A DNA stretch of 64,000 bases from Paraphysomonas bandaiensis (lineage: Eukaryota > Protista > Chrysophyceae), in NCBI GenBank assembly GCA_965644295.1, contig CBFFRP010000125.1, positions 62,001-126,000 on the forward strand, read 5' to 3'. Below are positions 20,701 to 56,738 of the stretch, one piece after another. Under the pieces are notes generated by a model. The model made no database searches. It was given only the letters and a program-made list of their open reading frames with translations, and was not told the origin of the DNA. Both the position numbers and the translations under genes were made by a program. Positions within the stretch are counted from its first letter, which is position 1. Every line of letters starts with the position of its first letter.

Positions 20701-23700
20701 GATATCAATACTTTCTCCAAAGGTTGCAGGGTGATCAGGACTATCCTCAATTAAAACTGTGGCCAAGCAAGTACTGCTGAGCAAAGAAAAAGCCACAGGA
20801 AACGTCTCTTTGTCAATAGGGTAGTATGCAGTCTTCAAGTCAGATGTGAATTCGATACGAGCATCAGATATAGATGGTTCCCATTCGGTAACTATTGATA
20901 TATTTTTATTGATTTCACAACTATTGCAGCGTGTCTTCCGCCTCTTTTCCAGCTCTACATACTTTGCAATTCTATCCTTAACCTCTTTCGACTCAATCAA
21001 TGCCTGCATAGGATGATTGTCCCTGTCATTATTTCCACCCCCAAGCACATGCACAAACCGGGATATGCCCCCTTTGGTATCTTCACCAAGAAATCCAATA
21101 TCCGCAAAGCGGTCTTCTTTGATATAACGCTCCAAGAAACGCTGGATATCATAACCATACGCCTGGCCCTCTATACAGAACATATCTTCTAGGACACCAC
21201 ACTGGTGAGTTACGGCATCCCACGAACATGTATCTGAATTCCATAACTGTGCCATCCCAGATGCTTCCTGGCTAAATTGATTCAGGACGCCCATACCATT
21301 GAATGCACTGGTAGTGAATGAAACTTGTCCCACATTTACTGCCACAGATTGACCCGGGGTGAATGAAAAAGCAGGACACAAGCCCCCACGACCTACCCAT
21401 GATATATCCAGAGTCTTAGTAAAAGCAGGACCCCTACTTTGGCCATCCATGAAATACTCAATCTTTCCTGTCCCCACATCCAATACGATTCCAACCACGG
21501 ACCCTTCCTTGAACTCCATTTTTTCAAAGGGTCTATTAGACATCATACCCTTACATAACTTGAAAGTGTTTATGGTTGAATCTACAACACCACTTAGAGC
21601 ATAAGAACCTAGCACGCTACCTATTCCCAAGCACACAGGAGATTCATTGCTCATATTAACTGCTTCGCTATGTTCAATATGTAATTCGTCGTCAGCAACA
21701 ATGCAACCAACTTGACTGTGAGATGCTGTGGTCGACTGTGATCCAAAAACGAACTCACAATATGCTTTCCCAAACAAAATTGGCATATCAATTCGAATTG
21801 ACTGAACCAAACTGGTGCGATTCTCGAAAAAGAAAAAAGTATCTTTCCCTATTGCCTCAGCTCGAATCTTTTTCTGGAGTTCTTCCTCGGGAGACGAAGC
21901 TGTAGCACAATCATAATCTTCCAGTTCAGCCAAACTCTGATCAAATACTATGGCCCTCCATCCCCACCCATTCTCTTTTGAAGCACACGAAAAACGAAAG
22001 AAAAAATGATCAGAAGACACACGAAGAGGTGGCATATCTCCGACACCTGGAAAATTCTTTCTTGATCCCAAGTTGTTACCAGAAAATCTCGACAAATTAT
22101 GATCTGGTCCTCCCTTCCACACAGCATCCGAAGATTGATTCACTCGAAACTCAATATAATTGTTGGTACCAGTTATAGCCGTCGACTTGTCAAAAATTAC
22201 CAACAAGCCATAAGCCCCAGGAATGGAGACCTCTTGACAATAGTTTGATGACTCTGTCAGTGGGTGGGTGCTTTCCAAAATAGTGTATTTCGACCGATCT
22301 CGAGAAAATACTTGAAATGGATCTTTCGGTGCAGCCGCAGATATAGCTGCAATTTTGTAGCCCCATACAAAGGGATGGTGTGTGCAATATTTTACATAAA
22401 CTGTCGACTTGGGAATTTTCAATGGCGAATCATGAGTAGGATAGACCATTGCGTTGCGCGATGTGAAAACGCACGAAGAAGAATCACATGAAGCATGTGT
22501 AAAAATACTAACAACACCAAATTTTCCTAATGGAGCATTGATACTGTTCATGACAGGATCAAATGCTACATGTAATCCACTTCCGTCAATATGTAAGGCA
22601 TTTACCTCTTCTATTTCGTCCGAAAAAAGCAGTCTTGTTGCTGGAATCCACATACTCTCATCACCTGTACTCTCAAGAACAGCACGTGCAGGGGCCTTCG
22701 AACCAATCATTGAACTTAAATCATTCGGCTCAATAGAAATATCTTGCCCTGGCGACAATGTTGCACCAGCGACGAAATCAGAACCGGAATTTTCAGGAAG
22801 CGTGAACCGACGTCGATAAACTTCTTTTAAGAATGTATAAATCACAACTATATCTACCCACCCTTCCGATATGTCACACTGCAACACCAATTTGTCTTGT
22901 CCACGGAGAGATGGAAGTCGTTGTCCAACAAGTTTGCCGCACTGGAAAGTTGCCAACGACAGGGAAGAAGTTCCGTGCGCATCCACTACAACTCCCCATG
23001 AGTTAGAAACCTTCCCAAACAGTTTCGACTTTGACTTTTGAAAAGTTGAGGACGCCATTCCAAAAGAAAACCCAGCAGTAGTGGGTAATGTAGACAGAGT
23101 GATCGCGAGTTGCCATTTCACTGTATCAACATTGCACAAACATGCAGGATTGCTCGTTCCTAATGACGATAGTCGTCGTGCAACTGTGTCCATTTCATAA
23201 AACTCCAGGCCTCGACTAGATATTTCTGGATTCCAAGTTCGCACATCAAGTGGGAAATAAGGATTAACATCGGCACTGGGCAGTAGTTTACAAAAAATGT
23301 TACCATCAATAGACTTCACTCCTACAGTGTTAACAATATACCCAATGGGCACAATATAATTCGAAGCTTCCGCAGTGCCGTTGTCGCTGACAGTATAAAC
23401 TATTTCAGTCTGAACAAGTCTAAAAGTATAATCGATATCAGCTTCATTAAGCAAATCTTCTTCGCCAAAATGACGAGATTGCACTACATTTTCCGACTTG
23501 AAACACATTTTATCAAACCCGACCAAAGGACTTCTCGCTGGACGTACAGCGAAGCGAAAGCAGAAGTCTCGTCCAGGCTCAAAATGATAATAATAGTAAA
23601 AAGACTTGGCAGGAATAAATAGGGGTTCATTTTTTCCTGTACCAGGCCAGTTACCGTCATCCCCTCGACCGGTGTACATTGCTTGTCCCCAAATATCACT

Positions 23701-26700
23701 GCGGCTATTATCCCTATAAAAAGTAATGTAAGATCCTCGACTTAACCTTGTCCCTTCCTCAAATACAACTTCTAACCCATCACACTCGATGCCCTCATCA
23801 TAAGCAACTTCTTCAAAAATATCACCACAAGAATTTTCAGCAACATGAAGGCTTTCATATACTCTCACATTCTCTCGATCTGAAAGAGACAATGAATCTT
23901 TGTATAAGGTGCTTGGGAACTTTCCTTTATTTGCAGAAAATTCTTCCTTCGACAACCCTTTCGCCATCATTTTCCAGCCCCACTTTGAAAAATGACCAAT
24001 GCTATGAAAATGAGCAATGAATTGATTCGATGGAACAAGCAATTCGTCACGAAACGAAGGAAAGCTCGACCCAATAAATTCCTTGGGGGTAAAAGTTGAA
24101 ATATCTTTTCTTCCACACTCGTCGCAGCGAAATATATTGTGATGAAACAGAGGGATCAGTAAATCTTTGTACTGAGAAGGCTCTGCAATTTCTCCAATAT
24201 AATTTCCATTTCCGTGGGGTTTGAAATCAATCCATTCTATTGATACCACGCGAAGTAGAGTTCCCACAGGAATAATATTGTCATTGCTCTCATTGCAACG
24301 AAAAAGCAGAAATTCCAAGTGTTCAATTTGTTTATCATTCATACTGCCTTTTCTTTTTCCGAGAATGTTTTTAGTTATGGCTTTCAGGCCCGCAGATCCT
24401 GAAACACAAAAATAATAGTCCTGTGAAGTCGATAGAGCAGGCAATAGGCGCACATAATCTACATCGTTGTTTACACTGTAGTCAGATAATTCCGTGTTCG
24501 ATGAAAACCACACCTTTACATGGTTATAATCTTCAATTTCCACCCGGAAAAAGAGATCTTGAGCGATGGGATCATACTTATGAGCGCTTTCGACAACATG
24601 TACACCATCGACAACACCATCCCCAGAGCAAAAAAATTTACGGACATCTTCAGCCAGTAAAGAGAAAAAGTCTTTCTGTATATCAGGTCGCAGTTGAACA
24701 TAATCAATGAACGTGGTAGCAAATTTGAGCCATGGCCGAAGTGTTTTCGCGCGTCCTTTATAGCCAAATGAATTTTCAGAAATTTTCAAAAAGAGTTCAA
24801 ACAGCCACTCAAACTCTTTAACATCGTTGCTGAAGTTGAATACGTATTTAGCATTGTCATCAAGGCACTTTGAAATCACATCAACGATTGCGACCGTAAA
24901 AGGAGACATTGCCTCTTTAAGTAATTCACTTGAGCATTGATCAGAGAGATTTAGTAGCAGTGGCATCACACTTTTGACATGAGTACAGAGGGCTTGTAGG
25001 GTAATGCTTTGTGTGAAGAGTAAATTTCGCCTCTGTAATTCGTTCAAATAATATTTAGTGGGGTACAATGGTAGCATATTGCTAATAATTTGTAATGAAG
25101 ATATAGCATCCCTAAAATTTTCATTAGCAACACACTTCTGAACGTCTTCTATGAGCTTATGCAAGAGTTTCGGGGCAACTGAATCATACATATTTTCCGA
25201 TGAAGCCGCATTAAGTAAATCACGAACGCCATATCGTTTTCCTAAGTGTCCTGCTAAAGTATATGTACAGTTGGAAGACGCAAGTTGCCTTCTATTTTCA
25301 TTGTTGTCCTTGCACCACGATGACAGCAACATACAACACGCTTCAAAAATACTGGCGAAAGAATCCACATGAGCAATCTCACTATGCTCCCACGCTTCTT
25401 CTTGCTGCAGAACATGTAGCACACTTTCAAGTAAACCCCAATTCGAAGACACTTGTTGTCGACGCCGTTGAGTGCGCAATATTGTCCATGGTAATGCCAA
25501 CTCAAACACATGATTGGAACCGAAGACAAATGACTGCTCAATGGCTGATCCTCTTGCGCATGCAGTAATTTGATACCCAGACCCATTATCACTTTTTTTT
25601 GCCCTGACGACACGATATAAGGCTCCACTGTTCTCTGACTCAGACCTCCAGTCAGGACCAACAGATAAAAACATATTCACTTCCGGTACAACACCTTCAG
25701 TGCGCCCATCAATTGCAAACCGAATCCTATGGATAGTTCGTTCTAGTTTTTGCTTCAATTGGGAGTTCGACATCAAATTTTCATCCAACACAACACTTCG
25801 AACTTCTTTCAAATCTCTCTGCAACAATCTGTAAAATGACTCATCGAAGTCGTCCTCAACAACACTTTGTACGTCAATTGAGGCATTTAATCTCTCCAGT
25901 GAGGTGTGCATCCGCACAAAGCACTTCATTGACGACTCAATCAAAGCAGGCACACCAGATACAGCCATTTGAATAGCAAGCCGACTAGGTGCGTAACCGT
26001 GATCCAGTATATGACTACCATTAAGCACGGACTGAAGTCTTGGAAATTGGACAGCGTATATGTCGTCGGACGATATTTCAACAGCGCAAACGTCAACTGC
26101 AACATCGCTATCGGATACTTCACGACTCACACTTTCGCGATAGTCGCTAAACATAGAGTCATCCCAAATTATCTCCACCTTATTACCATTTACAGCTTTT
26201 ACAAAGCCCTCACGGGCTCTCCTATCCGCTGACGGGTTCGTAAAGTGTAAAGTGCACTTCCTAGTGCACACACGAGTGCCTTCAGTAACAGCATATTCAG
26301 AAAGTGGAACATTGAATGAAATGCACCGAAAAACTTTATCAGGCATAGTCAAAGTCGAATTTTCGCGAAAGCTATATGATATCGCATCTCGGTGTATTGG
26401 TTCTTTAATTTTGCTGCCATCGTTGGAAACAACTTTCCGCACAGCAATCTTCATGCGCTCATATTCGCGCAATTGAATTTTGAGGTCTAAATCTATACAG
26501 AGCTCAAGTATCTCAACTACTTTTGTTCTCAACCGCACAATGCGTGATCTGCTGTGTGATATTCGTTCACTTTTCAATGCTGATCGCAAGCTAAACTTAC
26601 TAGAATACCGGCGTTCAAAAGATTTGGATGAATTTGCAGATCCCACAGACACGTTCGAGATAGATTTTAGCAGTGAATCGCGTAAATACTTGAAATTCGA

Positions 26701-29700
26701 AGCATCGTCATAATAGCCAGTTAAAATCATCCCCTTCAATAAATCTAAGAGTGAAAATGCCCTTGACACCTCCGGAGCCATATCATCATCGTAGTGTAAA
26801 ATATCATGAAGTGTATCGATACGCTCATATCCAGCTAAGTCGTCGCACAAAGACAGCCGGCGACCACTTCCAACAAACTCATTCATAAAGAGCAATAATT
26901 TGTCTTTATCAGTCGGGCCCAACGAACGTGCACCATTGTATGCATGTTCGACAGATATAGTTTCGTCACAAGAAATCATATCAATATTACATACATACAT
27001 ATGAAGCATTAAATCACAAAAAACTTGACTGTAATTTTTAATGTTGGCACAATCACTTCGATGAGGCCATAGCATACATGAGTACAACAGATCGAATGGC
27101 AGATACTCAGAAAATAGTTCACAGGCTTCGATATTTTTGTTTACGACAAGCCAATCCCACAGTCGAAACGAACTGTCCAAAAAGTTTCGAACATTAGTTC
27201 TCAACTCATAGCGATAAAATAACTCTAAACTCAACCACACATGCCCTTGTGTTCCTGTTGTTGCCGATATTTCTAAGCTGTCATTGACAAACCTGAACGA
27301 CAATAATCCGTTCCCTTTTGATTCTACATCACGCTCCCTTCTCTTCGCGTGATTTTGCGAAGACGCATTTCTAAAAAATATTTGTTTTATGATAAACATT
27401 TGGTCTTCTTCCCCACTGCATGACCTAAGGACGTGATTTTCTCGAATATAATCCAGTATGAGATTACTACCGTCAGCCACAGGAATAGAGAGCAGAGTCG
27501 TGACAGCGGGAATAAGGCAACAGTTTTTATATTCCAAAGCATTTCGCATAAAAAAATTATGTATGGACTTAGCATCCGACTGTGTCAATGCCCTCAGACT
27601 ACCGAAAATATAACTCCCTAAACTTTTCCAGCAAGAGCCTGCTAGAGACATCAATGAACGAATAACTGAAAAGTTTAATTCCGTGGAGCTATTCAGAAGC
27701 CGCAAACACACATCGACAAACTTGCGGCTAACTGGAGGTAAAAGAGAAGATATTGCATCATTCTTTGCCCAAAGGCTAATTATAGAGCACACTACAAAAA
27801 AAATCCTTTCCCAAATCGACTGATGTTGGAGAACTAACCATTTGATTTCATTGCTATCATTAAGTTTCATCGCAATGCACTCGAGAGTTTCTCTGACAAG
27901 CAAAACTGAGTCCATGAATCTTTCATCAATGGATTTCACATCTGAACGATTAACGTGAGTTTCAGCTTCCTGTACCATCAGTAACATCGCTTCCGAAATA
28001 CGATTCTGCAAAGCTTTAATGATATTGTGGTCATCGCCTTTCGACGAGGTAACAAGCTTGCAAAGAACCATAGCTGCTCCTTGTTGTAGTGCAATATTAT
28101 CACGTTCTTCATCTGTGATAAGATGACGACAAGTGGGAACTTTAGTTGTCGCAGTATCCACTAAAAACTTCAGTCCAGTTTGCACCAGTTGCTTCCGATT
28201 CGAAGGGTTTCGAGCCAAACTAAACAACGCAGCAGCAGCGTAGAACTTGATGAGTCGGTCAGAAGTACCGAGGCACATAATTAGTGGCTCAAAAACACCA
28301 TCTGAAGCCATTTTTTCCAAATTCTCAGAGTCAAAACATAGTTGCTGAATTATCCATGTACAGTGTCGACACGTGTCAATGTCAATTAGTTTCGACGAAT
28401 TATAAGTCAACTCGCAAACTTTCAACATGCTTTTCCACCATCCATCAGCAACCATGATAGCGGACGCACCTTTGCACTGTACAAACCTCGCCAAGGCAAG
28501 ACAACCCTGCCTTCGAATCGAAGCAGTTGTATTGCTGGCAAGTAAGCACGCCTCGCTAAGCCCAGCGCCTTGTCTATATAAAATATCGGTAGGCGCCGCT
28601 CCATCATTGGTGACAACAACAGTGCTATCCTGATTTATGTCCCTATGCGCGGATTTATTAAGTCTATCGGCATATAATTCAAAAGGCTTAGTGACTGATG
28701 CGATTTGTGCATACGCAATGGCGGCCCAACTCAATACGCTTTCATCTTCACTGTGAAGCATTGATAACAAGTGGTGGAGCCCCCCAGATTTTCGCGAATG
28801 ATTTAACTGAGGTAGCAAATACTGTATGTTACGCATTGTAAAGTCCTCAGAACCTAGAGTCCGAAAGAGTGGTCTAGCATGAAACTTGACTTCAGATTCC
28901 AGCGATGGTGAATCTAAAGAAACCATACCAGGGGACCCTGCGTGGTAACTATACCACACTCTGTCGCCTGGAATAGTTAAACGAGTTTCGGTAACTTTTC
29001 CGCGATGCTCAAAAGCCACATCATAGCCCTTGCAATCTGGACGCTCCTTATAAAAGGTTAGGACCTTTCCACTGTCGATATAGCAATGGGTATCGAAAAT
29101 TATTTCGATCTCGGTAGCCATATAAAAAAATATTCTTTTCATTTCAATATTCTGAGAGCATTGCGGAGAAATAACACTTTCAAACAGAGGATACTCGGCA
29201 ACCAAAGTTACCGAAAATCCTGGAGCGTCGATTGGTGCTTCTTCTGCAACGGCGGCAGGAGAAGCATATACTCTTGACATTGATTCAAACTTAAAATCAA
29301 TTGACAATTTATCCGTGTGATCAAACACAAATGTTCTATTTTTCTTCACAGCATCATCAATATCAGACTGGTGTATTCTGGTATTTGAAGGGTTAATAAT
29401 TATGACATCTTTTATTTCTTGACTGGACTCTTTTTCATGTGTATTAATTCTGCTGCAGACATGAAATGACATAGATATTCCAATAGCATGAGCAAACATT
29501 GCTTCGAAATGCATAGTATTCCCATTATTTGCAATCGCATAGTTCCCATTTGGAAAATTCTCTTCGTCAGTACACTTTACAATCGTGTTAATTAGCACTG
29601 GTTGGTAGTCTTTCATGTTGAAAGATGGCCTATGCCGTGAATAAACAAGACGAAACATCCAGGCAGCAATAAACGATTGAATAATAGAAGTGTCATCTGA

Positions 29701-32700
29701 ATCGAATGTTCGGTCGTGCATCCCAGTTATTAAATCAATAAGAGATCGCATATCAGGAATAATACTTTCGATTGCCACCCATGCCGCCGCACTTACCATT
29801 CCTGAAGTGCTGTCATTCGTTGCCCTGATAAGATCAACTATTGGGGGGCCGTTAATAATACGATCCCGGTAGCCCGAAGGACTCATATAAGTTGTACACT
29901 CAGGAGTATACCGAGCCAATTTTCCTACTGCAGATATTGCAGCAACTTTCGTACGTATATCAGTCGCCACAAGAAGTCGAAGCAATGCGGTGAACGAGTC
30001 GTTTTCGTAAGACGAGGTTTCCTCTGATGCAGAATCAGCCAATGGGAAAACATACAGGAGCAAACTGGTCCGCAACAACTGTTCAGATGATCGACCATTG
30101 AGTTCAACGTAAATGTTGTTTGTATGACCGGAGTAAATTTCACCTTGAAATATGCTTTTATCATTGGCTTCTAGCATAAATTTCGAAGTGCTTTCTGAAT
30201 CTTTTACATGGAGAGAAACATCATCATGCAAGGCGGATTTCTTATCCACCAAAACAGACACACCACAAGAATTATGAAACGACAATATATTATCGTATTT
30301 GTCGCGAACTACGCGGATTGAAGTATTGGGCAGCTCCAACTTTTCGGTACAACCAGTAGCACAATTGCGGGGGCCCCATTCCACAATTAAGTCCGAGGAA
30401 CTGACATGTATAATAACTCCACTGTGCCATTTGGAGGTATCCACAAATTTCATCATGTAATCATTGGTCTTAGTCACAATCATTCCAGTTTCATAGGGTC
30501 CCTCGTAATTTGGTAATGATGCAGCAAAGTCGGTACAAGTAATTCTTTCCAAATCACTTGTTGAATACAACATGGGGAAACTGTCACAGTCCTCAAATAT
30601 CACTTCAAAGCAAGAACCTGCTTTCGCCCATTCGTAATCATCACTAGCTATTTCATCCAACGCTATGGCTACCGCTCTACTGCAAATGACATCGTCAGCA
30701 CGAAGAAGCTGTAATAATGATCGCATTTTCCCACGAGCTACGAGCTCTGCACGAAATTTTTTTTCCATTGATAGAAGCCCAAGCAACTTTAACGTTTCGC
30801 TATCCAATGGAACCCTCTCAACGGTAAGAAGCCCCCGAGAGTCAGATTCGACCACCCAACCTCTATATTCATATGGAGATATCACTCGTAACTTTCGATA
30901 TTTATTGTTTGTCATAATACTTCTATCTACGATAATAATTTCCCCTTGGGGAATCGTTGTTTCTGGCTGTCCTTCGCACCCGTCAAGAGGAATCACGGAA
31001 AGTCCATTAGGCTGTATGACTTTATAACGCGAACTGCACATTAAATCGATAAGAGATTCTGCAGACCCAAAACCACTGCTGAATTCCCTCATAACTTTCT
31101 TGTTGCTCAATATCTGGCGCAAAGCTTTACATGCTGAAATCCTACTTCTTTCACTGCCACTTGATGCCAAAACTATGGAAAAATTGTCAGACAAGACGAA
31201 AAAAAGGGCAATAAAAACCTAAGAGTGGATCAACCCCATTGTCTTCCAAAATATCAATGCAGATTTGATCAGTGTCACCCAGCCCATCAGCTTCTCCGAT
31301 AACAGTTGCAGCGTATCCCCAATCCTCAACTCTCTCATCTGATGTAAATTTCCAATACAACCCACTCCCTTCAAAACGAATCGTGGGCCAATAACCAACG
31401 CCACATCCATGAAATTTCAACTGTCCTTCAGGACCGCATATCGGTATCTTATGATCCTTGTCCACAAAAAACTATAGCAGTATGTAAAAAAATAAATCTC
31501 AATTCTAGTTATGAACACCTCTAAGAAATCTCTATTCAATTGAGTGCTGCATCTCTCGTCAAAGACTATGGTGATTCTGGTAAAATGATCACCAAAAATA
31601 ATTTCACCAGACTCATCTGAAAATACATTACAAACTAACTTGTTAACATCAATGACATACCTGTGTTGGGTGCATAGTAGTGAGGCGATTGAATAAACTT
31701 GGACTCCGTGCAGGTGCGAATATTGTCCAAAGAAAACAAGTTAAAACATTTCACAATCCACAACGACAGATTAGGCAAATTCCTCTTCGGGACACTTAAT
31801 ACATCTGGTCTACTCTGCATAATGGCGACAAACCTTTGAGCAATTTCGACAAATGTATAAGGATCATTAGCCATCGTCTGTAGAATAAAATTACACGCAA
31901 CGTCAAACACACTACTTTATTATCATACCCAAACGGCAAGGGGGAGCTTTTCCCAGGACTGTGGATATTCCGGAATTGGAGAAAAAGGTTGAACCGGGTG
32001 CTTGAAAAACAACATCTCTTCATTACTCACTATTACAAGATCACTGTGTTCTTTCACAAAACTACCCCGAAGAAATTCAGAATCGATAATCTCAGCAGGA
32101 ATATGAAGATTCGCGATGCATGTCTCCGCCCAAAAAAATGCTGGGCCCAGATCTAATCCATCGGACGAAGTTGGCATCAACGCAAGTAAGCGAAACATAA
32201 CATCTAAATGAACCATCACTAATCGACCAACATTTGTGGCAGAAATAGTGGCCAAAGTTTCCAAGTGAGAGACAAATTCCTCGTCTGGAGGCTTCAGATC
32301 ACCATACGCTTCAATTTCATCCATAATGCGCTCCACTATCCTGGCAACACCGTCCACTTTTAGTACAGATTTCAACAGACTCCCACCATTTTCATGAACT
32401 TGAGCAACGGAAAAGAGTATGTTCAAGGTCATATTCTGCATGACTTTGTCAGTACTGTCAGCGTAGCGCCGCAATGAGTCAAAGATGTCGCTCACTTTCA
32501 TCAGACTGCTTCCAACAACAGATAACGCCTTGAGATGAAATGGTCTGCGTATCAAAAACTGTTGAATGTCCTCACTGGAAACAATCTCTTTAGACCAAAT
32601 TAAGTCGGCAATCCAATAATGCGAGTCTGGGTATTTCGATGCACCAAAAGTGCAAGGCATAACTCCTATACCAACTGGGCTGCTGTTACTCACAATTATA

Positions 32701-35700: not shown

Positions 35701-38700
35701 ACGCGAGTTCAATGGCAACAGCTCCCGGAAAGTCGACTTGATATATCTTTTTGGCTAGTTTTCCGTATGGGTGCGTACTCTCATATATTTCTCCACAGTC
35801 GCCGATCCATTCAACAAGATCATCAGTAAATGGAGCAACTACAAGTTTAAAACGCCCTTCATTCAAAGCATCAACAGGATGATCGATATCTAGCCACATG
35901 TTGGGTTTGGATAAAATCACTGGGGGGTATCCATCTATTCCGGGAAAATGCCGCCTTCCGGCAGTACAAGAATAAGCACCTACAAGACGATCATCATCTT
36001 CAGAGCTGGCATATCGCTTGTTGGGCAGCCCGCTATACACCTTGACAACATAAGAAGGATCTTCATTGTCACATCCAGTTTCCTCTTCATGAAAGCAAAG
36101 TTGAAGCATTTGAGTGCCACGAAACCTTACCCTTATACGTCCGTCTTTTCCAGGAAAATCAGTTGAAGAAGACAGAATCTTTGCTCCCTCAATAGATGCC
36201 AGTCGATCAAAGATGGAGCGTCTTTGAAATCCACGTATATTGAGGGGATACGCAACGAAACGCCAACCCCATAAGGAGTCTATATCATTGAATTCAGTGA
36301 TAAACAAATAATAAAATTCGTCAGCAGGAATAATTAATGGGTCATTTATATTAGTCGGAAAATTCGCAGGAGAAATACCTCCTGCACCCTGTTGACCACC
36401 ACCATACCTCCATGTACCGTTCACGACCAACTTTGACATCGACGGAATATCATTGATTGAAGGGTGCCTTTCTCCAGAGAAGGTCGGGCCCATTTCTTCG
36501 TTCCCGTGATCATATCGCATAACGTAGTCTTCATATTTGTCGTGAGACTTCAAGAACAACACTGCATCCTGAAAATCTCGACGATTATTGCCCGTTTCCG
36601 GATACATTCGCGTTTCTGACCTGGGATCGAATACAACAGCGATGGCCGAAGCTCCAGGGAAACTAATCTTATTCATCATGGAGAAAGTTTTTTCGCCACG
36701 ATTTAGTTGACATGGATGTGAAGTTTCAATGACAACATGATCCTTACTTGCGGATATCACGTCGTGCAATGGATCTGGGGGTGGATCTACAGGGAAAACG
36801 GAAAATTCGAAACCCCATTGAGGAGTAGCATTCGCAATTGCAATGTTGTACCATAACGATCTGCGACGTGCTTTGGAAATAAAATCCAACTTCCTATCGT
36901 TCAAACATATCAGTAAAGGGTCCACACCGTTTACCCCAGGGATATTGTCAGGATGTCCAATAGAATAAGATACGGGCGTCTTGTTACGGTTTTGTGACAA
37001 GCTAGGATTATCCAAATAAAACACCAAACGAGACCCCTCTGGAAATCGTGTCTTGGGGTTGAAAGCAACGCAACAGTACTCTGTTGGAGCATCCATAATA
37101 ACTTCATGAACTTCATCTATACCTACACGACATGGGTGTATGCTACCTTTGATCTTTGCGCCTTCCATATTCATATACTCGCCGTATTTTGTAAATGAGG
37201 TATCGACGATTCCATATGCAATCAGTCGATAGCCCCAAAACGTAATATCTTCATCGGCAGTAAATTCAATCCACACTCTGTTGTATGGAAAAATCAAGGG
37301 CGATGAAAATCCGGGACATGATTCTGAATACATTCCACTCAATTTATCAGAAATTTGTGCAGCCAACTTGCCCTTTTCGTCCAGTAGTGCCGGGTTTTGG
37401 GAGTAAAATACCACATAGTCGAAGCATTCCTCCGTAATTGTGGATGGGTCAAATTCAATATGAATACCGCTGTAACCCGGGAAATGTATTTCATGAACGT
37501 TTTCGGTACCCCCCTTATACGGATGACTTGATTCCAACAATATATATTTCTTATCATCATCCACATCAAAACCAGCCTGATTGACAAAATATTGATACAT
37601 GAAATCCATAATTGTTTTTCGATCTGAAAAACTTGTACATAAGCCATCATATAATTCAGGCTTTTCTTTACATTTTTCGAAAAGAAGTGCCATGACATGA
37701 CAATCTTCGAATACTGTCATGTGAAAATCGCCATTTTCAATAACTTTTAAAAGTGTTTTTGATGCCCATCGACTGGTGTCAGGATCTGCGCTATGCAGTA
37801 GATTCATACAAACTTTTACGTGTTCGAGCTTACGAGGACACGCACCATACAGCCCCCTAGCAACTTGTCGCTTATGGTTCACTAAAACACGGGTCCTTGA
37901 CGCCTGAAACTCTCTCTTAGATATAAATAAACCGTCAGAGTCAACAACAGGTCGATACCCATCTGCACTGCTACCGCCATAAACTTTCCAACATATCCGT
38001 TGCCAAGCACTTAAACGACCCAAATGCACAGGCTTTGATTCATGGCGTATTACTTCTAGAAACGAAACCACCCGAAAAGTAGGTGGCGTGTAAAGAAAAT
38101 CCTTCTGTCCAAAGTTAAAACGGAGAGGGTTAGTTGTTTCGCGTCCAATATACACCGCTGGTTGAAACCCACATGCCCACAAATCTGACTCGCCATGTCT
38201 TCTTCCTTCAAAACAGGGACCCTTCATCACGGAATGACCATTGACATATATGTGTATTCGAAAATGAATGAGATCTAAGTGAAAACCAACTACGTCACCC
38301 GGTTTTAGAGGAGGTATTTTTAATTGTACCGTTGATGTGTACCATTTCAACTCTCGCTTACCAAGGTCAAAAATAAAATCGAATTGTGAAACCTCTTCAC
38401 CAAAATGTGACTTTCCCGTCATGCTTGGAGCCAAATAATCCGACTTTAACCTTGTACTTTGAGGAATCGTCAAACCAATGCATACATTGGAAACTGATTC
38501 GCAAACGACCTCAAAAAATAGAGCACTTCGATATTGCGGTGACGGAATGGCAATTGGAATGGCAACAAGGTCAGCACACACACTCTTCGATTCAGTGGAA
38601 GTGTTGCACACATCGAAGAGAGAAAATGGTGTCGCAGATTCGCTTTGCAAAATTTCCAATAATTTTGGAAGACCACGACTAATAAGTTCTTCGCGAATCT

Positions 38701-41700
38701 GTCCTTCTTTAGTGAACATAAGATTGGCCAGTGCACGAGATGCATATAGTTCTGTCATTTCATCCGACGATTGTAGCCCGTTCAAAACTAAATCCAAACA
38801 TGGAGTACCGACAACATTGGCAAGATCAATTACGCTGTGACGAAACAAATCACCGAAACTTGGCATGACATCAAATATATATCCGCAATTTATATCCTTG
38901 ATATCTTCGTTGTTTTGATAAGAACTTGTGTTTAAATCAACTGTCAGTCTACCACCTTTAAGAGAAAAAGATTCCCAAAGTGTTCCCTTTGAAAACACTC
39001 TAGTCGCAGAGGGATCCAAAGGGTCGCCTTGTAGAGTTAGCTCAGTAGATTCAGGTAATGACGAGCCTCCTTGAAATTTTACATTCAGTTCTATTGCCAA
39101 AGGAAAATGCAATTCCCTTCTGTACGAATTGGTTATGAGTGGTAAAGGTGAGATATCCGTGTAGAACACCTCCTTCATCCAACGAGGCTGCGAGGTAAGC
39201 AATGACACCACCGCAATCAGCCACCGCTTTGTTGTAGCAGTTTCACCGCCGTAATGAGCTACATTGGATATAATCTGCTTCAGAATATCCATATTTTTCA
39301 CGATGGAGTAAAGAATCTTATTGGCCGAATGTGTAACCTCACCATCCGACTTCAATGTATCAATCACCTTCAAAAACAGCTGCAACTCCTCACAATTCTC
39401 ACCAATTAAAGAACAAATGAAACTGTAATCATGAGTTGAATACGAAAAAACATGACTGAGTACCGAGAGTAATAGACGAATAAGGCTGACATGTCTATCA
39501 ACTTGAACCTTTGTAGGACGAGATATAACAACTTCATAGCCAGCATTTTGTCCAGACACATCGGAGTGAAAAACTACAACGCACGATTCTGCTGGGATTA
39601 TCAAAGGAGATGCAACGGAAGGTAACTCGTGGGCAGCACTCGTCCCACTATACCTCTTCCGACCCCAAAAATCCCTTCGCATAGAATTTTTGAAAAAGGT
39701 AATATAATCGCCCTCTTTGTTGATTGAGGAATGGGGGTGAAAAACGACCTCAAGGGCATCAGACCCAGGTATTTCTACAATTTCTTGAGTATTCACATTC
39801 GGTGCATACATTGCATTGGGAAACCCATCTGAGGACAAAACCACAGCTTCAGGGCGCGACTTTCGCTCATCGTACGGATTATCTGTAGCTGTTGCATAGC
39901 AGCGCCATCCCCAATTCGACCGCTTACTTGTCGGAGTAAACTTAATCCAGACTCTATCACCAATAACGACCAATGGATTGTCATACGTCGGCCAGCTATT
40001 CTTCCCATAAAACGGACCACTATACGACGCCAGACAAATACTTTCATCTTCATCTTCAAAAAAGCTAAGAACGTCGCTTTTTTCTTCCGTCTGAGTCCGC
40101 CGGTCAAACCATATCTTCATAGCTCTATCCATGTCAATGTGTTCGTTATGTTCGGATTTGACAATACTATGCGAGGCAACAGAAGGTGGCCCGCTACGTT
40201 TGCCATCAATGAAAGAATGCGCTGTTGACCTGGATTCACCGAATGCGGATTTATTATCATCTAGCCATTCTTCCGCCACTTCACTATGTAGATTATCTCC
40301 TGTGCGGGGGAGTATAAATAACTTTTTATACGAAGGACCATAAGAATAAGGATGTTCACTCTCCATAACAGTTTCATATGAAGTTTCTCCAAATGATGAT
40401 TGGGTGCGCAGCAAACTATTGTCATCGTATTGTGATAGCGATATCCTGTCTAGGCATCGTGACACAACATGGCGCAAGTACACTGGCATCATCAATCCAT
40501 TATCCAGTTTTCCTTCTTTCAGCTCTGATGAGGCCTTGCTATCAGAACATAGGAAATTGAGCGCAGACAACATGTCATACGCGTATTCAAAAGAGCGGGT
40601 ACTCTCATCATCTCCATCATCTATATTATCCGTGGGAAGGGTAAGCATAAGGTCAATATCAATCTTGCTAAATTCGGCCATGAGTGCTTGTACTACAGCT
40701 ACGCCGCTCTGGTAGCATAAAGTCGATCCAATAAGTTGCAATGGAAGCTTTTCTGATGCGCGCTCCATGCTCTCAACAGAAAGGGGTCGGTCATAGAATA
40801 CGAGGTGCTCAACCTCACCAGTCATGGTATCTTCCAGCCCAGGGACAATGACATCTACTCTACCCAAGTACCAAGGGCAGGAGAGAGCACCGAGAAGATA
40901 GTTAAAGCCTTTCCAGGTCGACTCGGTGTAATCCTTCCAGAACGACTCTGTGTGATTCCGGTCGTCGATATGAATACTGACTCGCCCTCCATCTTCACTC
41001 GAGAACCGAATAGCGATAAAATTCCAATGACCGCATTCAATTTTCCCTTTGCTTCGCACACTGTACTTGTTCGAACGTTGAGCCTTTCCTATAGAGCCCG
41101 TAGCTTCTTTTAAACTAACCTCCACTTGCAGTTTTTTCGTTATTCTAACACTCAAATGGGGTTTATCCCTATCTCCTCCGAAAAATAGAAGGGTACCACT
41201 ATCCGATGTGCTAGGATTCAGATCACTACTCACACGGCGTTGTATTGAAGCCCAAAACGTAATCGTCAGTCCACCGTTAAAACAACTACTTATATCGGGG
41301 TGAACCAACCCCTTTACAACATTCATTTTATCAAATAAGTCAACATTTCCTAAACAGTACTGTTGGCGAATGGCACCATCAAGCTGAACAAGGTCACTCT
41401 CCCAGCTTGGAAGTGGAATACCTGCTTCTTTATATTCCATTTCTTTTGTTGATAACTCTGCACAGTCAATTTTGCAACTGTCCGCGCTATACTTCATCCT
41501 AATTTTCTCTGCCAATTCGCATTGCTTCTCCAGGTACATTAACTGTTTCTTTCCATTCATGGATTCCTTATTTTCTTCAAGAAGAATACCAATAAACTGC
41601 AACACTAAACACCTTACACCATGCCGTGGATGTTTCAGTAATCGAAACACATCGCCCAAATCTTCCGGAAGAATATTTAAACCCACTAGATTATCAGGAT

Positions 41701-44700
41701 TACTGACAATATGAATAATAATTCTCAGAACTGGTTCATGGGTGTTATCGTAGTCAAAGTTTAGAAGTTGGATAATATTAAGCAAATGCTGAGGTTTGAC
41801 ATTGCAGTCTTTCGCATCTAACGTCGATACAGTTGATATGGCAGCAAACTTCTCCAATGTGGACACCAATTGATGAACAAGAGATTGCAAAACATCTGCC
41901 CGTAGTTGTGAGTAGACACTTCGACTGATATCGAGTAAGTTATACGTCTTACTAACAAGCCGTACCAATGTGTGCGACTTTTGCAGTGAAGGAGACTGCT
42001 GGCCACTCGAGGGAAAAGATCGAGAACCTTGATCATGAAACTTTAAAGCTTCAAGCAAAACTAAAACAATTATATCATCAGTTCCAGGGCCTTCAGATTC
42101 TACTAACTTGAGTTGGGTCGACCTCTCCCCTAAAGTCACTTGCACGTGCGCTGGAGATACCGCCATGCAAGTTAAAAGAAGAGTTTTAATATCGTTGTTT
42201 AAGGCGATTCTTGTCTCGTCCGCACTTTTCCCCCACAGAGAAACCATATGTGCAATAATTCCGCTTTGAAGTACTTTACTAACTTCAGAACTCTCGTTAT
42301 TTATGCAGATATTGTGAAGCAATCGGACACCTAGGAGATGCACCCATGTCTTATCTTGAACAGAAAATAGGGACTCAACACTATCCCGAAATTGGTCCCA
42401 TTGCATTGTTTGCAGTAGCAGTGAACGTCCATTCGTTGTCGTGAAGTTACACACTATACCTGCCGCAAATTTTGATGTCCGATAGTCGTGACTTTTCATT
42501 AGCATGATTAAGAGTGTCATATACGACGAGACAAATTCCTCCACATTATCTTTCCCGAAGTCCTGCGTTGTTGTATCTGCAGGAGCAGAAGCCACCCAAT
42601 CATCGACGAGATTACCACTCGGAACGGCAACAAGCTTAAAACCCCACGGCAACAAATTTCTGTCCAAAGGATAACGATCAGGGTCACAATCAACGCTGTA
42701 TTGAACCCAAAAAGTTTTCGAAGGGACTGGGATATTTATACTCTGCGAATGCCCAATTCCCGGTAATAATTTCCCGTACATTTTATCTCCAAATCGTTTC
42801 AATGCTTTTCCGTCTCCATGTCCACCTGATACTTCTGATCCATTCACTAAAATCTCTAAGTAAGGAGGTTTATCCAAATCCGTCTGTGACAAACTACTGT
42901 CGTAATCCATATCAGACGAAGGATGAAAATAAATATCCACAGACTCTTCAGCTGATGGCACAGAAACCTCTATAATTTGGTTGCGTCCACGGGGCAATGG
43001 ATGTCTAGACTCGGCTACAACCGCATAAGGCGTAGCGGTTAGAGCATCAAATGCCGGTATCACAGCCTGATAACTAAATCTCCAGCCCCTAAACCTCTGC
43101 AAGGAATCTGCTTGCCAAGTGTATGTAAATTCGCTTCCTTCAACATACAATGGCTTCACACCACCAACTCCAGGAAATCTAGAGCCACTATACGGACCAC
43201 CCAACAGGATAGTCGCATCTCTATCCAAGAAAAATGTGATCATATCGCACTGTTCTTCCGTCCGAGATTTCTCATCAAATTTGATCATAATGCCTTTAGC
43301 ATGGCGAATTTCGAGAGTTTTCTTTTCACTGGTACTGTCTTCGGTAATAGACTCAGTGAACACGTGATCTGTAGCAATCGGAGGTGAGGGCCGTATTTCA
43401 TCGAAATATTTTCCATGAATATGAATTATGTAACCATTGGATACTTTATCTCTACTGATTGCACTCTTAATTTTAACTACAACTTCGTCACAAGGAAGTA
43501 AAAAGCTGGAGTTTCGATGTCGATACTTTCTTGAAGCTGAGTCACTGATGGAATACGTCACCGGATTACCTCTGTAGTCATTATATTCAAACAACAGAAG
43601 GTCTTTCCCTCTACCAATATCCATCTGCTCAATGTCTATTAACAAAGCCGCTGCTCCAGGGATTTCAATCCTACGCTCTACATGTACATCCATTTTCAAT
43701 GGGTGAACACTTTCCTCTGTAAACGAACTCGGAAGGCACTGCAGCTCATGAGTCTTGTTATCCGATCCCTGTTCAATAAGACGAAGAGTTGAAGCATATA
43801 ACAAACCAGTGATGATTTGAAGTTTACTATTTGTACCAATATCTTCCACATTTTCCACATCGGTAAGAAAATCTTCGTCTACATCAAAGAGTATCGTGTG
43901 ACTATCTGAATCACTCAGTCCAAAGGCATATTTCATCATTGCCGTTTTGTCCATTGCTAGATAACGGAGAGCTGTCCATGCATTTACAGAAACTTCGGCG
44001 CCTGTCACTTCGCAATATCCTAACATGTGTAGGATTTCTAAAAATCCATTGAAAATCATAGCGCTTCTACAGCGTATTAACAATGCGTTAGTGCCACACG
44101 CAAGATGCATTTTATATCGTACCTGTTTTCTGGCTCTGATGCAATTCGAGCAATGCAACTTGATGCATACAACTTGCACCGATCATTCCCAAGTGTGCAC
44201 ATATTCTGTAAACAGCTGAATACTTGTCGTCGAACATCAGACTTGTCGGCTAGCAAGTCTACACGATTATATCCGTCACTCATCACGTTATCCAGGCACA
44301 AAGCCGCAGCACTTTGGGAGTGAGCATCATCTGGAAAACGCAGAAAAAAATCTATTCCAAACAAGTGAAGAAACTGCGCCGTTACATGAGACGAAATAGT
44401 AATGTTTGCCAATGAGAAGGCGGCAAATCGCTTTGTGAAATCATCCTCGCTACTCAGGTATCGTGTGAGAAGTTTAACTCCCTCCCCGTCCCGATAGTTC
44501 ACAATACGAAGGCGCCGAAAGTTTACTTCATCATCAACTTGCTCAGAACTGTGAAGTGATTGGGACGTAAATTTCGCAACTACTGAAAATTTCCATCCGT
44601 AGAAAGAGTCCACAGGCTCGGCACCTACTCGAAAGCTGAAGAAAAGACGATCGCATGCATTAAATTCCAAATCATCGAATTGTGTACCAGATAAAGCGAA

Positions 44701-45508
44701 CTTAGGAGACTCTTGAGTGTACTCATCCAGATAAAAGCAGAGACGGTCCACATTGGGAGCTGTACAACTTGAATCGTCGAACCGCACATATATCTTAGAG
44801 GCACCAGGTATAACAATTTTTTCATTGGGTATAGAACAAGACTTGCGATAAGGGTGCCGCGTTTCAAAAGTGAAAAGTGCATGGCTGGAACTGCAGTCTG
44901 TGGGCGACAAAGTAGACCGGAATATAGTCAGTGTTACCCATCTAGCTATTATATGATCAACTGGAGAGGGCATTGCATACGCGTAACCTGAAATAAATAC
45001 ATAATGCCAAGAAGTTACTGTCACTAGCTCAACAAAACTTACGAATCAATTCATGAATATTTTCAGATATGCTGTCTAATGCTTGATCGCAGAAATCATG
45101 TGTTGGTTCTTTAGCCCACATAGCATTGATAAGGCGGATCAGTAGACGTTGCCCGGTTGGTTTCAAAAATAACGTTTCTCTGTTCTTAGCGACAACCTCC
45201 ATGTTTTTAGCCATCGACTCATCTTTGGTAATGTCAGATAAAGAGTGCGAAGGAGTAACTATTGCACTACGGAGAGCCTCTGCATACAATGATTGGGCAC
45301 TTTTTGCACCCGCATATGCTAGAGACGATAGTCTGCGAAGAGTTTTTTCACTACTCGATATGTCAAAGCTGTGCTCTGCAGTGAGGCCAAGACATTGAAA
45401 TATGTTTTTCCTGTACTCTTGAATATGGTCACTCCTGCTTTTATCAATAAGGCCACGAATGAGTTCAGCAAATGTTTCGTCATCTCTATCGACGCCACTA
45501 TTAGGCAT
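16494..45508 (-). CDS. Giant (~9,487 aa) IP3-receptor/ryanodine-receptor-family channel with CUB-like, SPRY, LamG-like, SH3-like and ARM modules
   Basis: Eleven GT-AG introns (44988-45042, 44067-44122, 33594-33649, 33440-33489, 33163-33208, 31878-31928, 31617-31660, 31472-31518, 31173-31218, 19192-19247, 18939-18982; 551 bp total) join all ORFs in frame: 29015-551 = 28464 nt = 9488 codons. The C-terminus has the RIH-associated motifs 'FLQRACDGQYSRAQDYFRE' and 'LTDMTQGPNVGNQ', six TM segments, and 'GIIIDTFADLR...CFIC...HTEEHHFTWNYLFYSMYL'. Confidence 0.9.
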
Positions 45509-46160: not shown

Positions 46161-46572
46161 TTTAATGAAGCAGTTAATGTATATACCGCAACCTACTAGA
46201 CCGGTCGATACATCGGGCTCTTTTAGGGGTCCACGGAGTCAAAGGACTTACTCTCAGCTGTCAAATCGTACATTAGAAAAGTAAGTGTATCACTATTGTT
46301 TCACATTAATTCAACGAGCCCTTATGCAGGGATGTCTCAGACTTCCAGTCCACAGTCATATTCGATGAAACTGTTACAATAAGTAACATGTAATGATGCG
46401 ATATATTTAACCTTCAATTGATAATAACTGGTGTTAGGGTATGCCAGTGTCGAGTTACGAGGATGCCAAAAGAGATACGAATCCTAATCGTGGATATTGT
46501 AATCCCGACCACATCTCAGAAGTGGAATGTGATAATATCAGTGGATGAGGTAACACCAATGGTAACTTTATA

Positions 46573-56327: not shown

Positions 56328-56738
56328 GCAGTCAGTGACTTCATACACTTCATTTCACTGTACACAGCTGCTGTGTTGATAAGATCCCATATACCAGTAT
56401 ACAGTATGCTTGATAGGGTATAGAAATTCCTACAGAAAATACATAGAAATACCGACTGAGTTTTCGTCCAATCAGATTGATTCTTTTCTCTAATTTTAAC
56501 CAACAAATAACAGAGTCGATATCACGAATCGATGTATTTTATTGGATGATTCAGATATATTGTTTGCATCCATTGCTAAAAAGCAAGCCATATGTTTTAA
56601 CGATACACGTCCATGAAATTGATACAATCTGTATGGCTAGTCATTTCAACTTTTCCCTTGAGGAAACAATGGTACTTTGCTTTCAACATTGTTGCGTCAT
56701 GTCTATGAAATCATAGTAAATTGCAGCATATATCTTAC

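What the first reader, a model, noticed from the sequence alone, without database searches (positions are those of the whole stretch)
21930..44900. About 19 copies of a ~110-aa 'ESxHPY...(F/I)PGA...FD...TE...D...FPG...PL...WG(F/W/Y)' module in an ion channel
Seen: the module recurs singly and in arrays, e.g. FETRHPY (~44860), MESEHPY (~40350), a six-copy run from LESSHPY to ~34960 (34960-37540), and LESTHPL (~22270). My count by eye is ~19, including degenerate copies. Known: a similar CUB-like beta-sandwich occurs in giant ubiquitin-ligase-type scaffolds (ZZEF1/HECTD4-like and protist HECT proteins), often together with SPRY. Inference: a cytosolic E3-type scaffold toolkit was grafted onto a release channel and may serve as a multivalent ligand- or protein-sensing array.
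Basis: partly seen in the sequence, partly recalled or inferred. Interest (0 to 1): 0.8.

Follow-up and report, generated by a model that had tools for sequence, protein, structure and literature searches.

The report
Cytosolic CUB-domain array in giant release channel
A marine protist encodes a roughly 9,500-residue relative of the ryanodine/IP3 receptor calcium-release channels that carries 18 (perhaps 19) diverged copies of a cytosolic CUB-type beta-sandwich otherwise typical of giant protist HECT ubiquitin ligases, a domain combination I found described nowhere.

Summary
An HMM built only from other organisms' proteins finds 18 copies of the ~110-aa module on the minus strand between 44892 and 21925. 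A 19th (39190-38852) is probable but degenerate. Shuffled controls give nothing significant.

The fold is CUB: the AF2 model has pLDDT 90, all top-50 Foldseek PDB hits are CUB domains, and the family profile hits cubilin at 2.7e-10. The module lacks the CUB disulfides, and no clear hydrophobic segment precedes the C-terminal pore domain, so it is cytosolic by topology.

The host is one gene. A spliced 26.6-kb contig removes seven 44-56-nt introns and gives an 8,215-aa stop-free ORF. It continues into a weak RIH_assoc match and a pore domain matching RyR (3e-37) and IP3R3 (1e-36).

The module family is large (2,208 representative proteins). Many of the best-scoring carriers are giant HECT ligases of oomycetes, a chrysophyte, a pelagophyte and a dictyostelid, including one in this genome. 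Only a few unnamed kin are channels. At least 12 other RIH_assoc loci in this genome, and every solved RyR/IP3R, lack it.

Nearly all copies sit at the same positions in orthologues of 30-42% identity. The cbCUB acidic Ca2+ signature survives in only 1-2 window copies, against 75% of ligase-type copies. I read the array as a fixed docking or structural shell, not a Ca2+-sensor array. It is a new variant of a known kind.

The parts
16497..45508 (-). Whole giant gene, about 9,500 aa. Probable ATG at 45508, stop at 16497-16499. The 5' exon junctions (near 45040 and 44080-44182) and two 3' junctions (near 19192-19247 and 18863-18950) are inferred, not read-supported.
   Evidence: ORF map. Orthologue P0052 is collinear across pieces A and B. 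The spliced contig is long enough to reach about 16.5 kb.
19198..44182 (-). 8,215-aa stop-free ORF after removal of seven GT..AG introns: 33594-33649, 33440-33489, 33162-33207, 31878-31928, 31617-31660, 31472-31518, 31173-31218.
   Evidence: Joints in spliced contigs of runs X1 and X2. The 31877/31929 joint also appears in marine metatranscriptome X5. Run X8 is unspliced. Frame check.
44560..44892 (-). CUB-like copy 1 (FETRHPY)
   Evidence: Independent family HMM, E 2.1e-15
43400..43735 (-). CUB-like copy 2
   Evidence: E 1.5e-4; orthologous module in P0007
43049..43369 (-). CUB-like copy 3. Keeps the Asp/Glu/Asp/Asp positions but lacks the N-terminal ESxHPY strand.
   Evidence: E 7.4e-23; signature
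42611..43039 (-). CUB-like copy 4 (with insert)
   Evidence: E 1.3e-5
39872..40387 (-). CUB-like copy 5 (MESEHPY). The N-terminal strand is separated from the rest by an insert of about 45 aa.
   Evidence: E 1e-21 for the body, plus the N-terminal motif
39506..39859 (-). CUB-like copy 6
   Evidence: E 1.4e-25
38852..39190 (-). Probable degenerate 19th copy
   Evidence: Missed by the independent HMM. hhalign 59% probability, E 9e-5, in register. AF2 beta-sandwich with pLDDT 77 and weak CUB hits.
37196..37561 (-). CUB-like copy 7 (LESSHPY), first of the six-copy run. It is the only copy with the full Tyr/Asp/Glu/Asp/Asp signature, and it is the modelled copy.
   Evidence: E 1.3e-26; AF2 pLDDT 89.9; all top-50 PDB hits are CUB; signature
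36779..37174 (-). CUB-like copy 8
   Evidence: E 1.5e-6
36233..36754 (-). CUB-like copy 9, split by an insert
   Evidence: Two halves at E 3.9e-7 and 1.3e-7; split in orthologue P0007, contiguous in P0001
35819..36193 (-). CUB-like copy 10 (degenerate)
   Evidence: E 2.1e-4; leave-one-out E 0.046
35468..35803 (-). CUB-like copy 11
   Evidence: E 2.5e-22
34946..35323 (-). CUB-like copy 12, end of the six-copy run
   Evidence: E 2.6e-15
31283..31715 (-). CUB-like copy 13, interrupted by two introns and full length once spliced
   Evidence: E 1.9e-18 on the spliced protein; introns
28924..29187 (-). CUB-like copy 14 (partial)
   Evidence: E 1e-5
23941..24612 (-). CUB-like copy 15, split by an insert of about 80 aa
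   Evidence: Halves at E 1.1e-5 and 1.5e-9; split the same way in three orthologues
23527..23883 (-). CUB-like copy 16
   Evidence: E 1.4e-20
22324..22629 (-). CUB-like copy 17. It lacks the N-terminal strand, and a SPRY-like domain lies just upstream.
   Evidence: E 2.8e-5; SPRY-like stretch 23244-22687 by BLAST to a Pfam-SPRY region of P0004
21925..22302 (-). CUB-like copy 18 (LESTHPL)
   Evidence: E 1.2e-26
25093..25479 (-). RIH domain, in the same uninterrupted 4,008-aa ORF as copies 14-18
   Evidence: Pfam PF01365: 20.2-21.8 bits, just under the 22.3 cut-off; 25.0 bits, over the cut-off, in the genome search
18962..19201 (-). RIH_assoc-like segment
   Evidence: Pfam PF08454, E 8.5e-5, 22.8 bits, below the 28.5 cut-off
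16692..17456 (-). Pore domain, S6 and C-terminal Cys/His motif of RyR/IP3R type. The GGGIGD filter is replaced.
   Evidence: phmmer against PDB: RyR 3.1e-37, IP3R3 1.2e-36; alignment; Ion_trans E 1.2e-4

Best explanation
The region is the cytosolic part of one giant gene (about 9,500 aa) of the RyR/IP3R superfamily.

Shown:
- 18 firm copies and one probable copy of a CUB-fold beta-sandwich are spread along the polypeptide. They are interspersed with about five SPRY or SPRY-like stretches, two weak LamG-like matches, ARM/HEAT repeats and an RIH domain.
- The modules belong to a disulfide-free branch of the CUB superfamily whose best-scoring carriers are largely giant protist HECT ligases.
- In the channel lineage the array is old and fixed. 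Nearly every copy has a counterpart at the same position in orthologues of 30-42% identity.
- The copies are strongly diverged, at 12-31% identity to the reference copy.
- Most copies have lost the acidic Ca2+-site signature that the ligase-type copies keep.

Inferred mechanism: a tetrameric channel would display about 72 such modules. They would form a peripheral cytosolic shell that serves as fixed docking and structural surfaces, as the SPRY and repeat domains do in animal RyRs. Partner binding at the CUB loop face would mostly be Ca2+-independent. It would be passed to the pore through the ARM/RIH solenoid. At most two or three copies (37561-37196, 43369-43049, perhaps 35323-34946) could still hold a cation.
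For: Repeat reality and count.

CUB fold and homology:
- AF2 model with pLDDT 89.9.
- All 50 best PDB folds are CUB, TM about 0.7. ESM Atlas gives CUB clusters in 9 of 10 listed rows.
- The family profile hits cubilin at 2.7e-10, MASP-1/3 at 2e-6 and C1r at 1.5e-5.
- Pfam CUB scores on family members that align to window copies.

Cytosolic branch: no family column has more than 28% Cys, and only four borderline hydrophobic windows (19-21 aa, mean Kyte-Doolittle above 1.6) lie in the 8,215 aa upstream of the pore domain (at the stricter 1.8 cut-off one search found none in coding sequence).

One gene: seven spliced introns give an 8,215-aa ORF. Copies 14-18 and the RIH domain share one uninterrupted ORF.

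Channel identity.

Conservation: copies map almost one-to-one onto P0007, P0098, P0001, P0093 and P0171. In the N-terminal half, identity is higher inside modules than outside: 39% against 30%, and 48% against 37%.

Loss of the Ca2+ signature.

Specificity: the module is absent from at least 12 other RIH_assoc loci of this genome and from solved RyR/IP3R chains.
Against: - No binding partner, localisation or conductance has been tested. The docking role rests on analogy with CUB and SPRY domains elsewhere.
- In the C-terminal half the modules are no better conserved than their surroundings: 37% against 36%, and 44% against 46%. That fits a merely structural role.
- The selectivity filter is non-canonical, so the protein may not conduct Ca2+ like RyR or IP3R.
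- The equivalence of the module's conserved Glu with the canonical Ca2+-binding Glu rests on loop position, not on a superposition.
- The library type of the two fully spliced runs is only guessed. The one run on record as RNA covers a single joint.
Confidence: 0.55

Rival explanations
1. The array is a multivalent Ca2+ sensor. The modules would be Ca2+-binding CUB domains that load Ca2+ near the open pore. They would then bind basic side chains of partners, or of the channel itself, giving feedback on release.
For: The family consensus keeps residues that profile alignment places at the canonical Tyr and two Asp ligands of C1r, C1s and MASP CUBs. A conserved Glu sits in the same loop. 204 of 273 ligase-type instances keep all four. 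Copy 7 keeps all of them, copy 3 keeps the acids, and copy 12 has Glu in place of the last Asp.
Against: Only 1-2 of 18 window copies keep the triad. Even for copies 3 and 7 the orthologues substitute a ligand: Gln or Asn in copy 7, Lys in copy 3. No coordinates could be inspected and no Ca2+ binding was measured.
Confidence: 0.15
2. The copies are largely decayed relics. An ancestral scaffold was fused to the channel, and the modules now serve only as inert spacers that add bulk, with no specific ligands.
For: Window copies sit on long branches and score far below the genome's own ligase copies: best E 1e-26 against 1e-40 to 1e-48. Several are truncated or split by inserts. In the C-terminal half they are no more conserved than the flanks.
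Against: The open frame, the number and the order of copies are kept across orthologues at 30-42% identity. In the N-terminal half the modules are about 10 points more conserved than the linkers. The core fold motifs persist in most copies.
Confidence: 0.2
3. The finding is a gene-model artefact. The CUB-rich N-terminal half would be a separate scaffold gene lying next to a channel gene.
For: Automatic gene calls in related assemblies split the locus at the intron cluster, as in P0007 plus P0098. The RNA status of the two fully spliced runs is only a guess.
Against: Removing seven GT..AG introns of 44-56 nt joins both halves into one 8,215-aa frame without a stop. A run on record as a metatranscriptome shares one joint. 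Copies 14-18 lie in the same unbroken ORF as the RIH domain. Single predicted proteins of kin combine the modules with channel domains: P0005 (6,404 aa) has 13 module copies with RIH and RIH_assoc, and the C-terminal part of P0154 (7,139 aa) has RIH, RIH_assoc and Ion_trans.
Confidence: 0.03

Closest known systems
Extracellular Ca2+-binding CUB domains (cubilin, C1r/C1s, MASP-1/2/3, neuropilin, PCPE-1; Pfam PF00431)
   Same: They share the ~110-aa beta-sandwich fold (TM about 0.7) and significant profile similarity. The N-terminal Tyr motif, the 'DY' strand start, the 'SD' loop and the terminal Gly-aromatic all align.
   Different: The module has no conserved disulfide cysteines and sits on the cytosolic side of an intracellular-channel homologue. 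The Pfam CUB model does not reach the window's copies. Most window copies lack the acidic Ca2+ ligands.
Giant protist HECT ubiquitin ligases with 4-7 CUB-like modules (Lagenidium, Aphanomyces, Nothophytophthora, Chlorochromonas, Acytostelium, Aureoumbra; G000 contig C34:12626-27250 in this genome). Other named carriers of the module, HECT not confirmed here: Mallomonas, Blepharisma, Biecheleria, Symbiodinium
   Same: It is the same module family, at 23-44% identity and BLAST E down to 3e-14. The accompanying domain types are also shared: SPRY, LamG_3-like and ARM/HEAT, plus MIB_HERC2 in channel kin.
   Different: The window's gene has no HECT domain. It ends in a RyR/IP3R pore domain and has three times as many modules, which are much more diverged. 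No collinear multi-domain block is shared.
Ryanodine receptors and IP3 receptors (animal RyR1-3, ITPR1-3)
   Same: Pore domain, S6 and the C-terminal Cys/His motif are homologous (E 3e-37 and 1e-36). RIH is present, with a weak RIH_assoc match. SPRY or SPRY-like stretches and a huge cytosolic solenoid resemble RyR.
   Different: The protein is about twice the length of RyR and carries 18-19 CUB-like modules that no solved RyR or IP3R has. No Ins145_P3_rec, MIR or RyR-repeat domains were detected. The GGGIGD filter is replaced, with a five-residue gap.

Membership tests
CUB domain superfamily | ~110-aa beta-sandwich (jelly-roll) fold of CUB type | tested here: met
   AF2 model of copy 7 has pLDDT 89.9. 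The 50 best PDB folds are all CUB. ESM Atlas gives CUB clusters in 9 of 10 listed rows.
CUB domain superfamily | Significant sequence-profile similarity to canonical CUB domains | tested here: met
   Family profile A2 hits cubilin at 2.7e-10, MASP-1/3 at 2e-6, C1r at 1.5e-5, and only CUB proteins. The window-only profile A1 gives cubilin at 1.4e-3. Pfam PF00431 scores on family members but on no window copy, even at E<=0.5.
CUB domain superfamily | Four conserved cysteines forming two disulfides | tested here: not met
   No family column exceeds 28% Cys. This fits a cytosolic branch of the superfamily.
CUB domain superfamily | Extracellular or secreted location | tested here: not met
   No hydrophobic segment at a mean Kyte-Doolittle score above 1.8 in coding sequence, and only four borderline windows above 1.6, upstream of the C-terminal pore domain. 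The cytosolic location is inferred by homology with RyR/IP3R topology.
Ca2+-binding CUB subclass (cbCUB) | Tyr plus Glu/Asp/Asp ligand signature | tested here: not met
   Kept in 204 of 273 ligase-type instances, but in only 1-2 of 18 window copies, and not stably in orthologous copies. The Glu equivalence is inferred from loop position only.
RyR/IP3R channel superfamily | C-terminal pore domain with S6 and C-terminal domain homologous to RyR/IP3R | tested here: met
   RyR 3.1e-37, IP3R3 1.2e-36. S6 and the Cys/His motif align.
RyR/IP3R channel superfamily | RIH and RIH_assoc domains | tested here: inconclusive
   RIH scores 20.2-25.0 bits around the 22.3 cut-off. RIH_assoc scores 22.8 bits, below the 28.5 cut-off. 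Kin P0005 and P0154 show the same weak pattern.
RyR/IP3R channel superfamily | GGGIGD/GGGVGD selectivity filter | tested here: not met
   The alignment to RyR shows the filter replaced, with a five-residue gap.
IP3 receptor proper | N-terminal IP3-binding core (Ins145_P3_rec, MIR) | tested here: not met
   No Pfam match in any piece, even at E<=0.5 for the two large ORFs. A very diverged core cannot be excluded.
Ryanodine receptor proper | SPRY domains together with RyR repeats (PF02026) | tested here: inconclusive
   Three Pfam SPRY matches were found, two over the 26.3-bit cut-off, plus two SPRY-like stretches found only by BLAST to SPRY regions of P0004. No RyR repeat was detected.
HECT E3 ubiquitin ligase | C-terminal HECT catalytic domain | tested here: not met
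   No HECT match anywhere in the gene. The genome's own ligase on contig C34 has one at E 8e-65.

The most novel reading that the evidence does not exclude
A lineage of marine protists has built a distinct class of giant intracellular channel, about 9,500 aa per subunit and about 72 cytosolic CUB modules per tetramer. It would reuse the substrate-recognition module of giant HECT ligases. The channel and the ligase would then read the same cellular partners, coupling ion release, or a non-conducting scaffold role given the altered filter, to ubiquitin-pathway clients.
Probability: 0.1. Interest if true: 0.8.

Novelty: new variant of a known kind. Interest (0 to 1): 0.58.

Why it matters
RyR and IP3R are textbook examples of channels that grew by adding cytosolic domains, and the described additions are SPRY, RyR repeats, MIR and EF-hand domains. 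This gene shows a different route. The superfamily has taken in a cytosolic, disulfide-free CUB module 18-19 times, roughly doubling the size of an already giant protein.

The finding also defines a large cytosolic CUB family: 2,208 representative proteins, spanning stramenopiles, alveolates and Amoebozoa. I found no study of it, and its consensus keeps a Ca2+-site signature normally thought of as extracellular. The channel and a ligase in the same genome offer a natural pair for asking what the module binds.

Tried and rejected
- Pfam on the gene itself finds no CUB at E<=0.5. The link to CUB needed fold search and a family profile.
- The word-based homologue search gave only 3-4 hits per query and no named channel.
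- A tree of 63 modules was unresolved. Window copies are not one clade, but that is no different from shuffles, and long branches meet. I draw no conclusion on single or multiple acquisition, or on the donor.
- BLAST for collinear multi-domain blocks between the channel and HECT ligases found only single-module matches. Block transfer is not supported.
- A MIB_HERC2-like domain was found in channel kin but not in the window's protein.
- Literature searches found nothing relevant on CUB with RyR or IP3R, on CUB with HECT, or on ZZEF1 or HECTD4 with CUB. One apparent hit was a 'j.cub' DOI.
- The 19th copy stays undecided after hhalign and a second AF2 model.
- No complex prediction was run, since no specific binding claim is made.
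- The organism's name is coded. I established only that it is a marine eukaryote with a 62.6-Mb assembly.
Full report
**Gene and transcript**

The minus strand between about 45.5 and 16.5 kb holds a chain of very long open frames. Two of them run 3,515 and 4,008 codons.

I laid public runs on 30900-34100. A 26.6-kb contig of run X1 and a 17-kb contig of X2 skip seven short segments of 44-56 nt. Each begins with GT and ends with AG on the minus strand. A run on record as a marine metatranscriptome (X5) shares the 31877/31929 joint. Run X8 holds the unspliced form.

Removing the seven segments joins 44182..19198 into one frame of 8,215 codons without a stop. One joint needed a two-base shift, to 33440-33489, to give GT..AG and keep the frame.

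Upstream, pieces 45580-45032 and 45045-44080 are collinear with the N-terminus of orthologue P0052. Downstream, the frame continues after inferred introns into an RIH_assoc-like exon and an 818-codon exon ending at 16497. The length of the X1 contig fits a transcript that reaches about 16.5 kb. This is an inference.

The RNA status of X1 and X2 is only guessed by the tool. The argument for splicing rests on the intron signature, the restored frame and X5.

**Host protein**

The last exon matches solved RyR and IP3R pore domains equally well (3.1e-37 and 1.2e-36). S6 and the C-terminal Cys/His motif are well conserved, but the GGGIGD filter is replaced, with a five-residue gap.

Pfam adds the following:
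- RIH near its cut-off
- RIH_assoc below its cut-off
- Ion_trans
- three SPRY matches, two over the cut-off
- Arm/HEAT repeats
- two weak LamG_3-like matches

BLAST to SPRY regions of P0004 adds two SPRY-like stretches. No IP3-binding core, MIR or RyR repeats were found.

The host is therefore a diverged member of the RyR/IP3R superfamily, not specifically an IP3R. Upstream of the pore domain, the hydropathy scan finds no coding segment at a mean score above 1.8 and only four borderline windows at 1.6.

**The repeat**

- A four-seed HMM found non-seed copies at 1e-5 to 2e-13.
- Leave-one-out tests gave E<1e-3 for 16 of 18 copies.
- The cleanest test used an HMM built only from 90 module instances of other organisms' proteins. 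It finds 18 copies, from 44892 to 21925, at domain E of 1.3e-26 to 2.1e-4. Twenty shuffles and the reversed sequence gave at best 0.081.

Copy 13 becomes full length only after splicing. Copies 5, 9 and 15 carry inserts.

A 19th candidate (39190-38852) is conserved in orthologues and aligns in register by hhalign (59%, E 9e-5). It folds as a beta-sandwich with CUBs among weak hits. I call it probable.

No significant copy lies elsewhere in the window, including the neighbouring RIH-bearing gene.

**Fold and family**

Copy 7 folds confidently, with pLDDT 89.9. The 50 best PDB matches are all CUB domains: C1s, C1r, neuropilin, Kremen, TSG-6, MASP and PCPE-1. The ESM Atlas agrees.

A profile of the 18 window copies hits CUB proteins first, but weakly. 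A 98-sequence family profile hits cubilin at 2.7e-10, MASP-1/3 at 2e-6 and C1r at 1.5e-5, and no RyR or IP3R chain.

Pfam's CUB model scores on family members that align with window copies but not on the window copies themselves. The family has no conserved cysteines.

**Distribution**

An exhaustive HMM search found 2,208 representative proteins at E<=1e-3, and 133 at 1e-30. Among the best 150, at least 35 carry HECT and 53 carry MIB_HERC2.

Named carriers:
- oomycetes: Lagenidium, Aphanomyces, Nothophytophthora
- chrysophytes: Chlorochromonas, Mallomonas
- a pelagophyte: Aureoumbra
- dinoflagellates: Symbiodinium, Biecheleria
- a ciliate: Blepharisma
- a dictyostelid: Acytostelium

Only a handful are channel kin, and all are unnamed metagenome or run assemblies: P0005, P0006, P0007 plus P0098, P0045/P0154, P0064 and P0093. 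P0171 and P0172, found by the homologue search, are two more.

In the window's own 62.6-Mb genome the module also occurs in three other kinds of locus:
- a 4,875-aa ILEI-CUBx5-MIB_HERC2-LamG_3-HECT ligase on contig C34
- a 7,778-aa DUF3638/DUF3645 frame on contig C66
- a few smaller loci

The genome has at least 12 further RIH_assoc loci, most of IP3R size. None of their contigs appears among the module matches. The module is therefore not routine in IP3R homologues, even here.

**Age and constraint**

Orthologues at 30-42% identity are collinear over the whole 8,200 aa. Nearly every copy, including the split ones, has a module at the aligned position.

In the N-terminal half the modules are about 10 points more conserved than the rest. 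In the C-terminal half they are not.

A module tree is unresolved. Similarity to the ligases is limited to single modules. Recruitment of a ligase-type module family into the channel is plausible, but the direction and the number of events are not shown.

**Ca2+ site**

Profile alignments place the family's conserved Tyr and two Asp at the canonical Tyr and Asp ligands of C1r. A conserved Glu lies in the same loop as the canonical Glu. This last equivalence is my inference from loop position in the model.

All four are kept in 204 of 273 ligase-type instances. Only 1-2 of 18 window copies keep them, and orthologous copies substitute them freely. The sensor-array idea is therefore weak for this channel, although copies 3, 7 and 12 remain candidates.

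**Reading**

I take the array as a fixed cytosolic shell of docking and structural modules on a giant RyR/IP3R-type protein. This is a new variant of a known kind. The function is inferred, not shown.

Noticed in passing
window 46549-53739 (+): A divergently transcribed neighbour has an RIH domain over Pfam's cut-off (24.6 bits) and an ARM_LRRK2-like region. It has no CUB-like copy and no pore domain. A single in-frame stop at 52444-52446 separates a 1,965-codon frame from a 431-codon frame in the same phase.
   Followed up: partly
window 16929-17200 (-): The pore loop lacks the GGGIGD filter. The alignment to RyR shows a different sequence with a five-residue gap, while S6 and the C-terminal Cys/His motif are well conserved.
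   Followed up: partly
G000, contigs C46, C152, C238, C182, C288, C144, C409, C395, C426, C324, C363, C148: The genome holds at least 12 further RIH_assoc loci over Pfam's cut-off, most in open frames of 2,200-2,900 aa. This is a large expansion of IP3R-like channels.
   Followed up: no
G000:C34:12626-27250 (+): An uninterrupted 4,875-aa frame encodes a giant HECT ligase: ILEI, five near-consensus CUB-like modules plus a partial sixth, MIB_HERC2, LamG_3 and HECT.
   Followed up: partly
G000:C66:165604-188937 (-) and C66:105-132 kb: A 7,778-aa open frame with DUF3638/DUF3645 carries one CUB-like copy. Six similar module matches also lie in a row on the same contig, in frames of 531-1,282 aa.
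   Followed up: no
window 31173-33649: Seven introns of only 44-56 nt cluster in 2.5 kb, while the flanking 10.5-kb and 12-kb exons have none. Automatic gene calls in related assemblies break at this cluster.
   Followed up: yes
window 22324-24612 (-): Copy 15 is split by an insert of about 80 aa. Copy 17 lacks its N-terminal strand, and a SPRY-like domain lies between copies 16 and 17.
   Followed up: no
P0005, P0006, P0045, P0154 (channel kin): Channel kin from other assemblies carry MIB_HERC2-like domains, in P0005 and P0154 just upstream of RIH. None was detectable in the window's protein.
   Followed up: partly
window 9427-11046 (-), 56709-57668 (+), 12881-13579 (-): Ordinary neighbours: a CorA-like Mg2+ transporter, a mitochondrial carrier and an LRR protein.
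   Followed up: no
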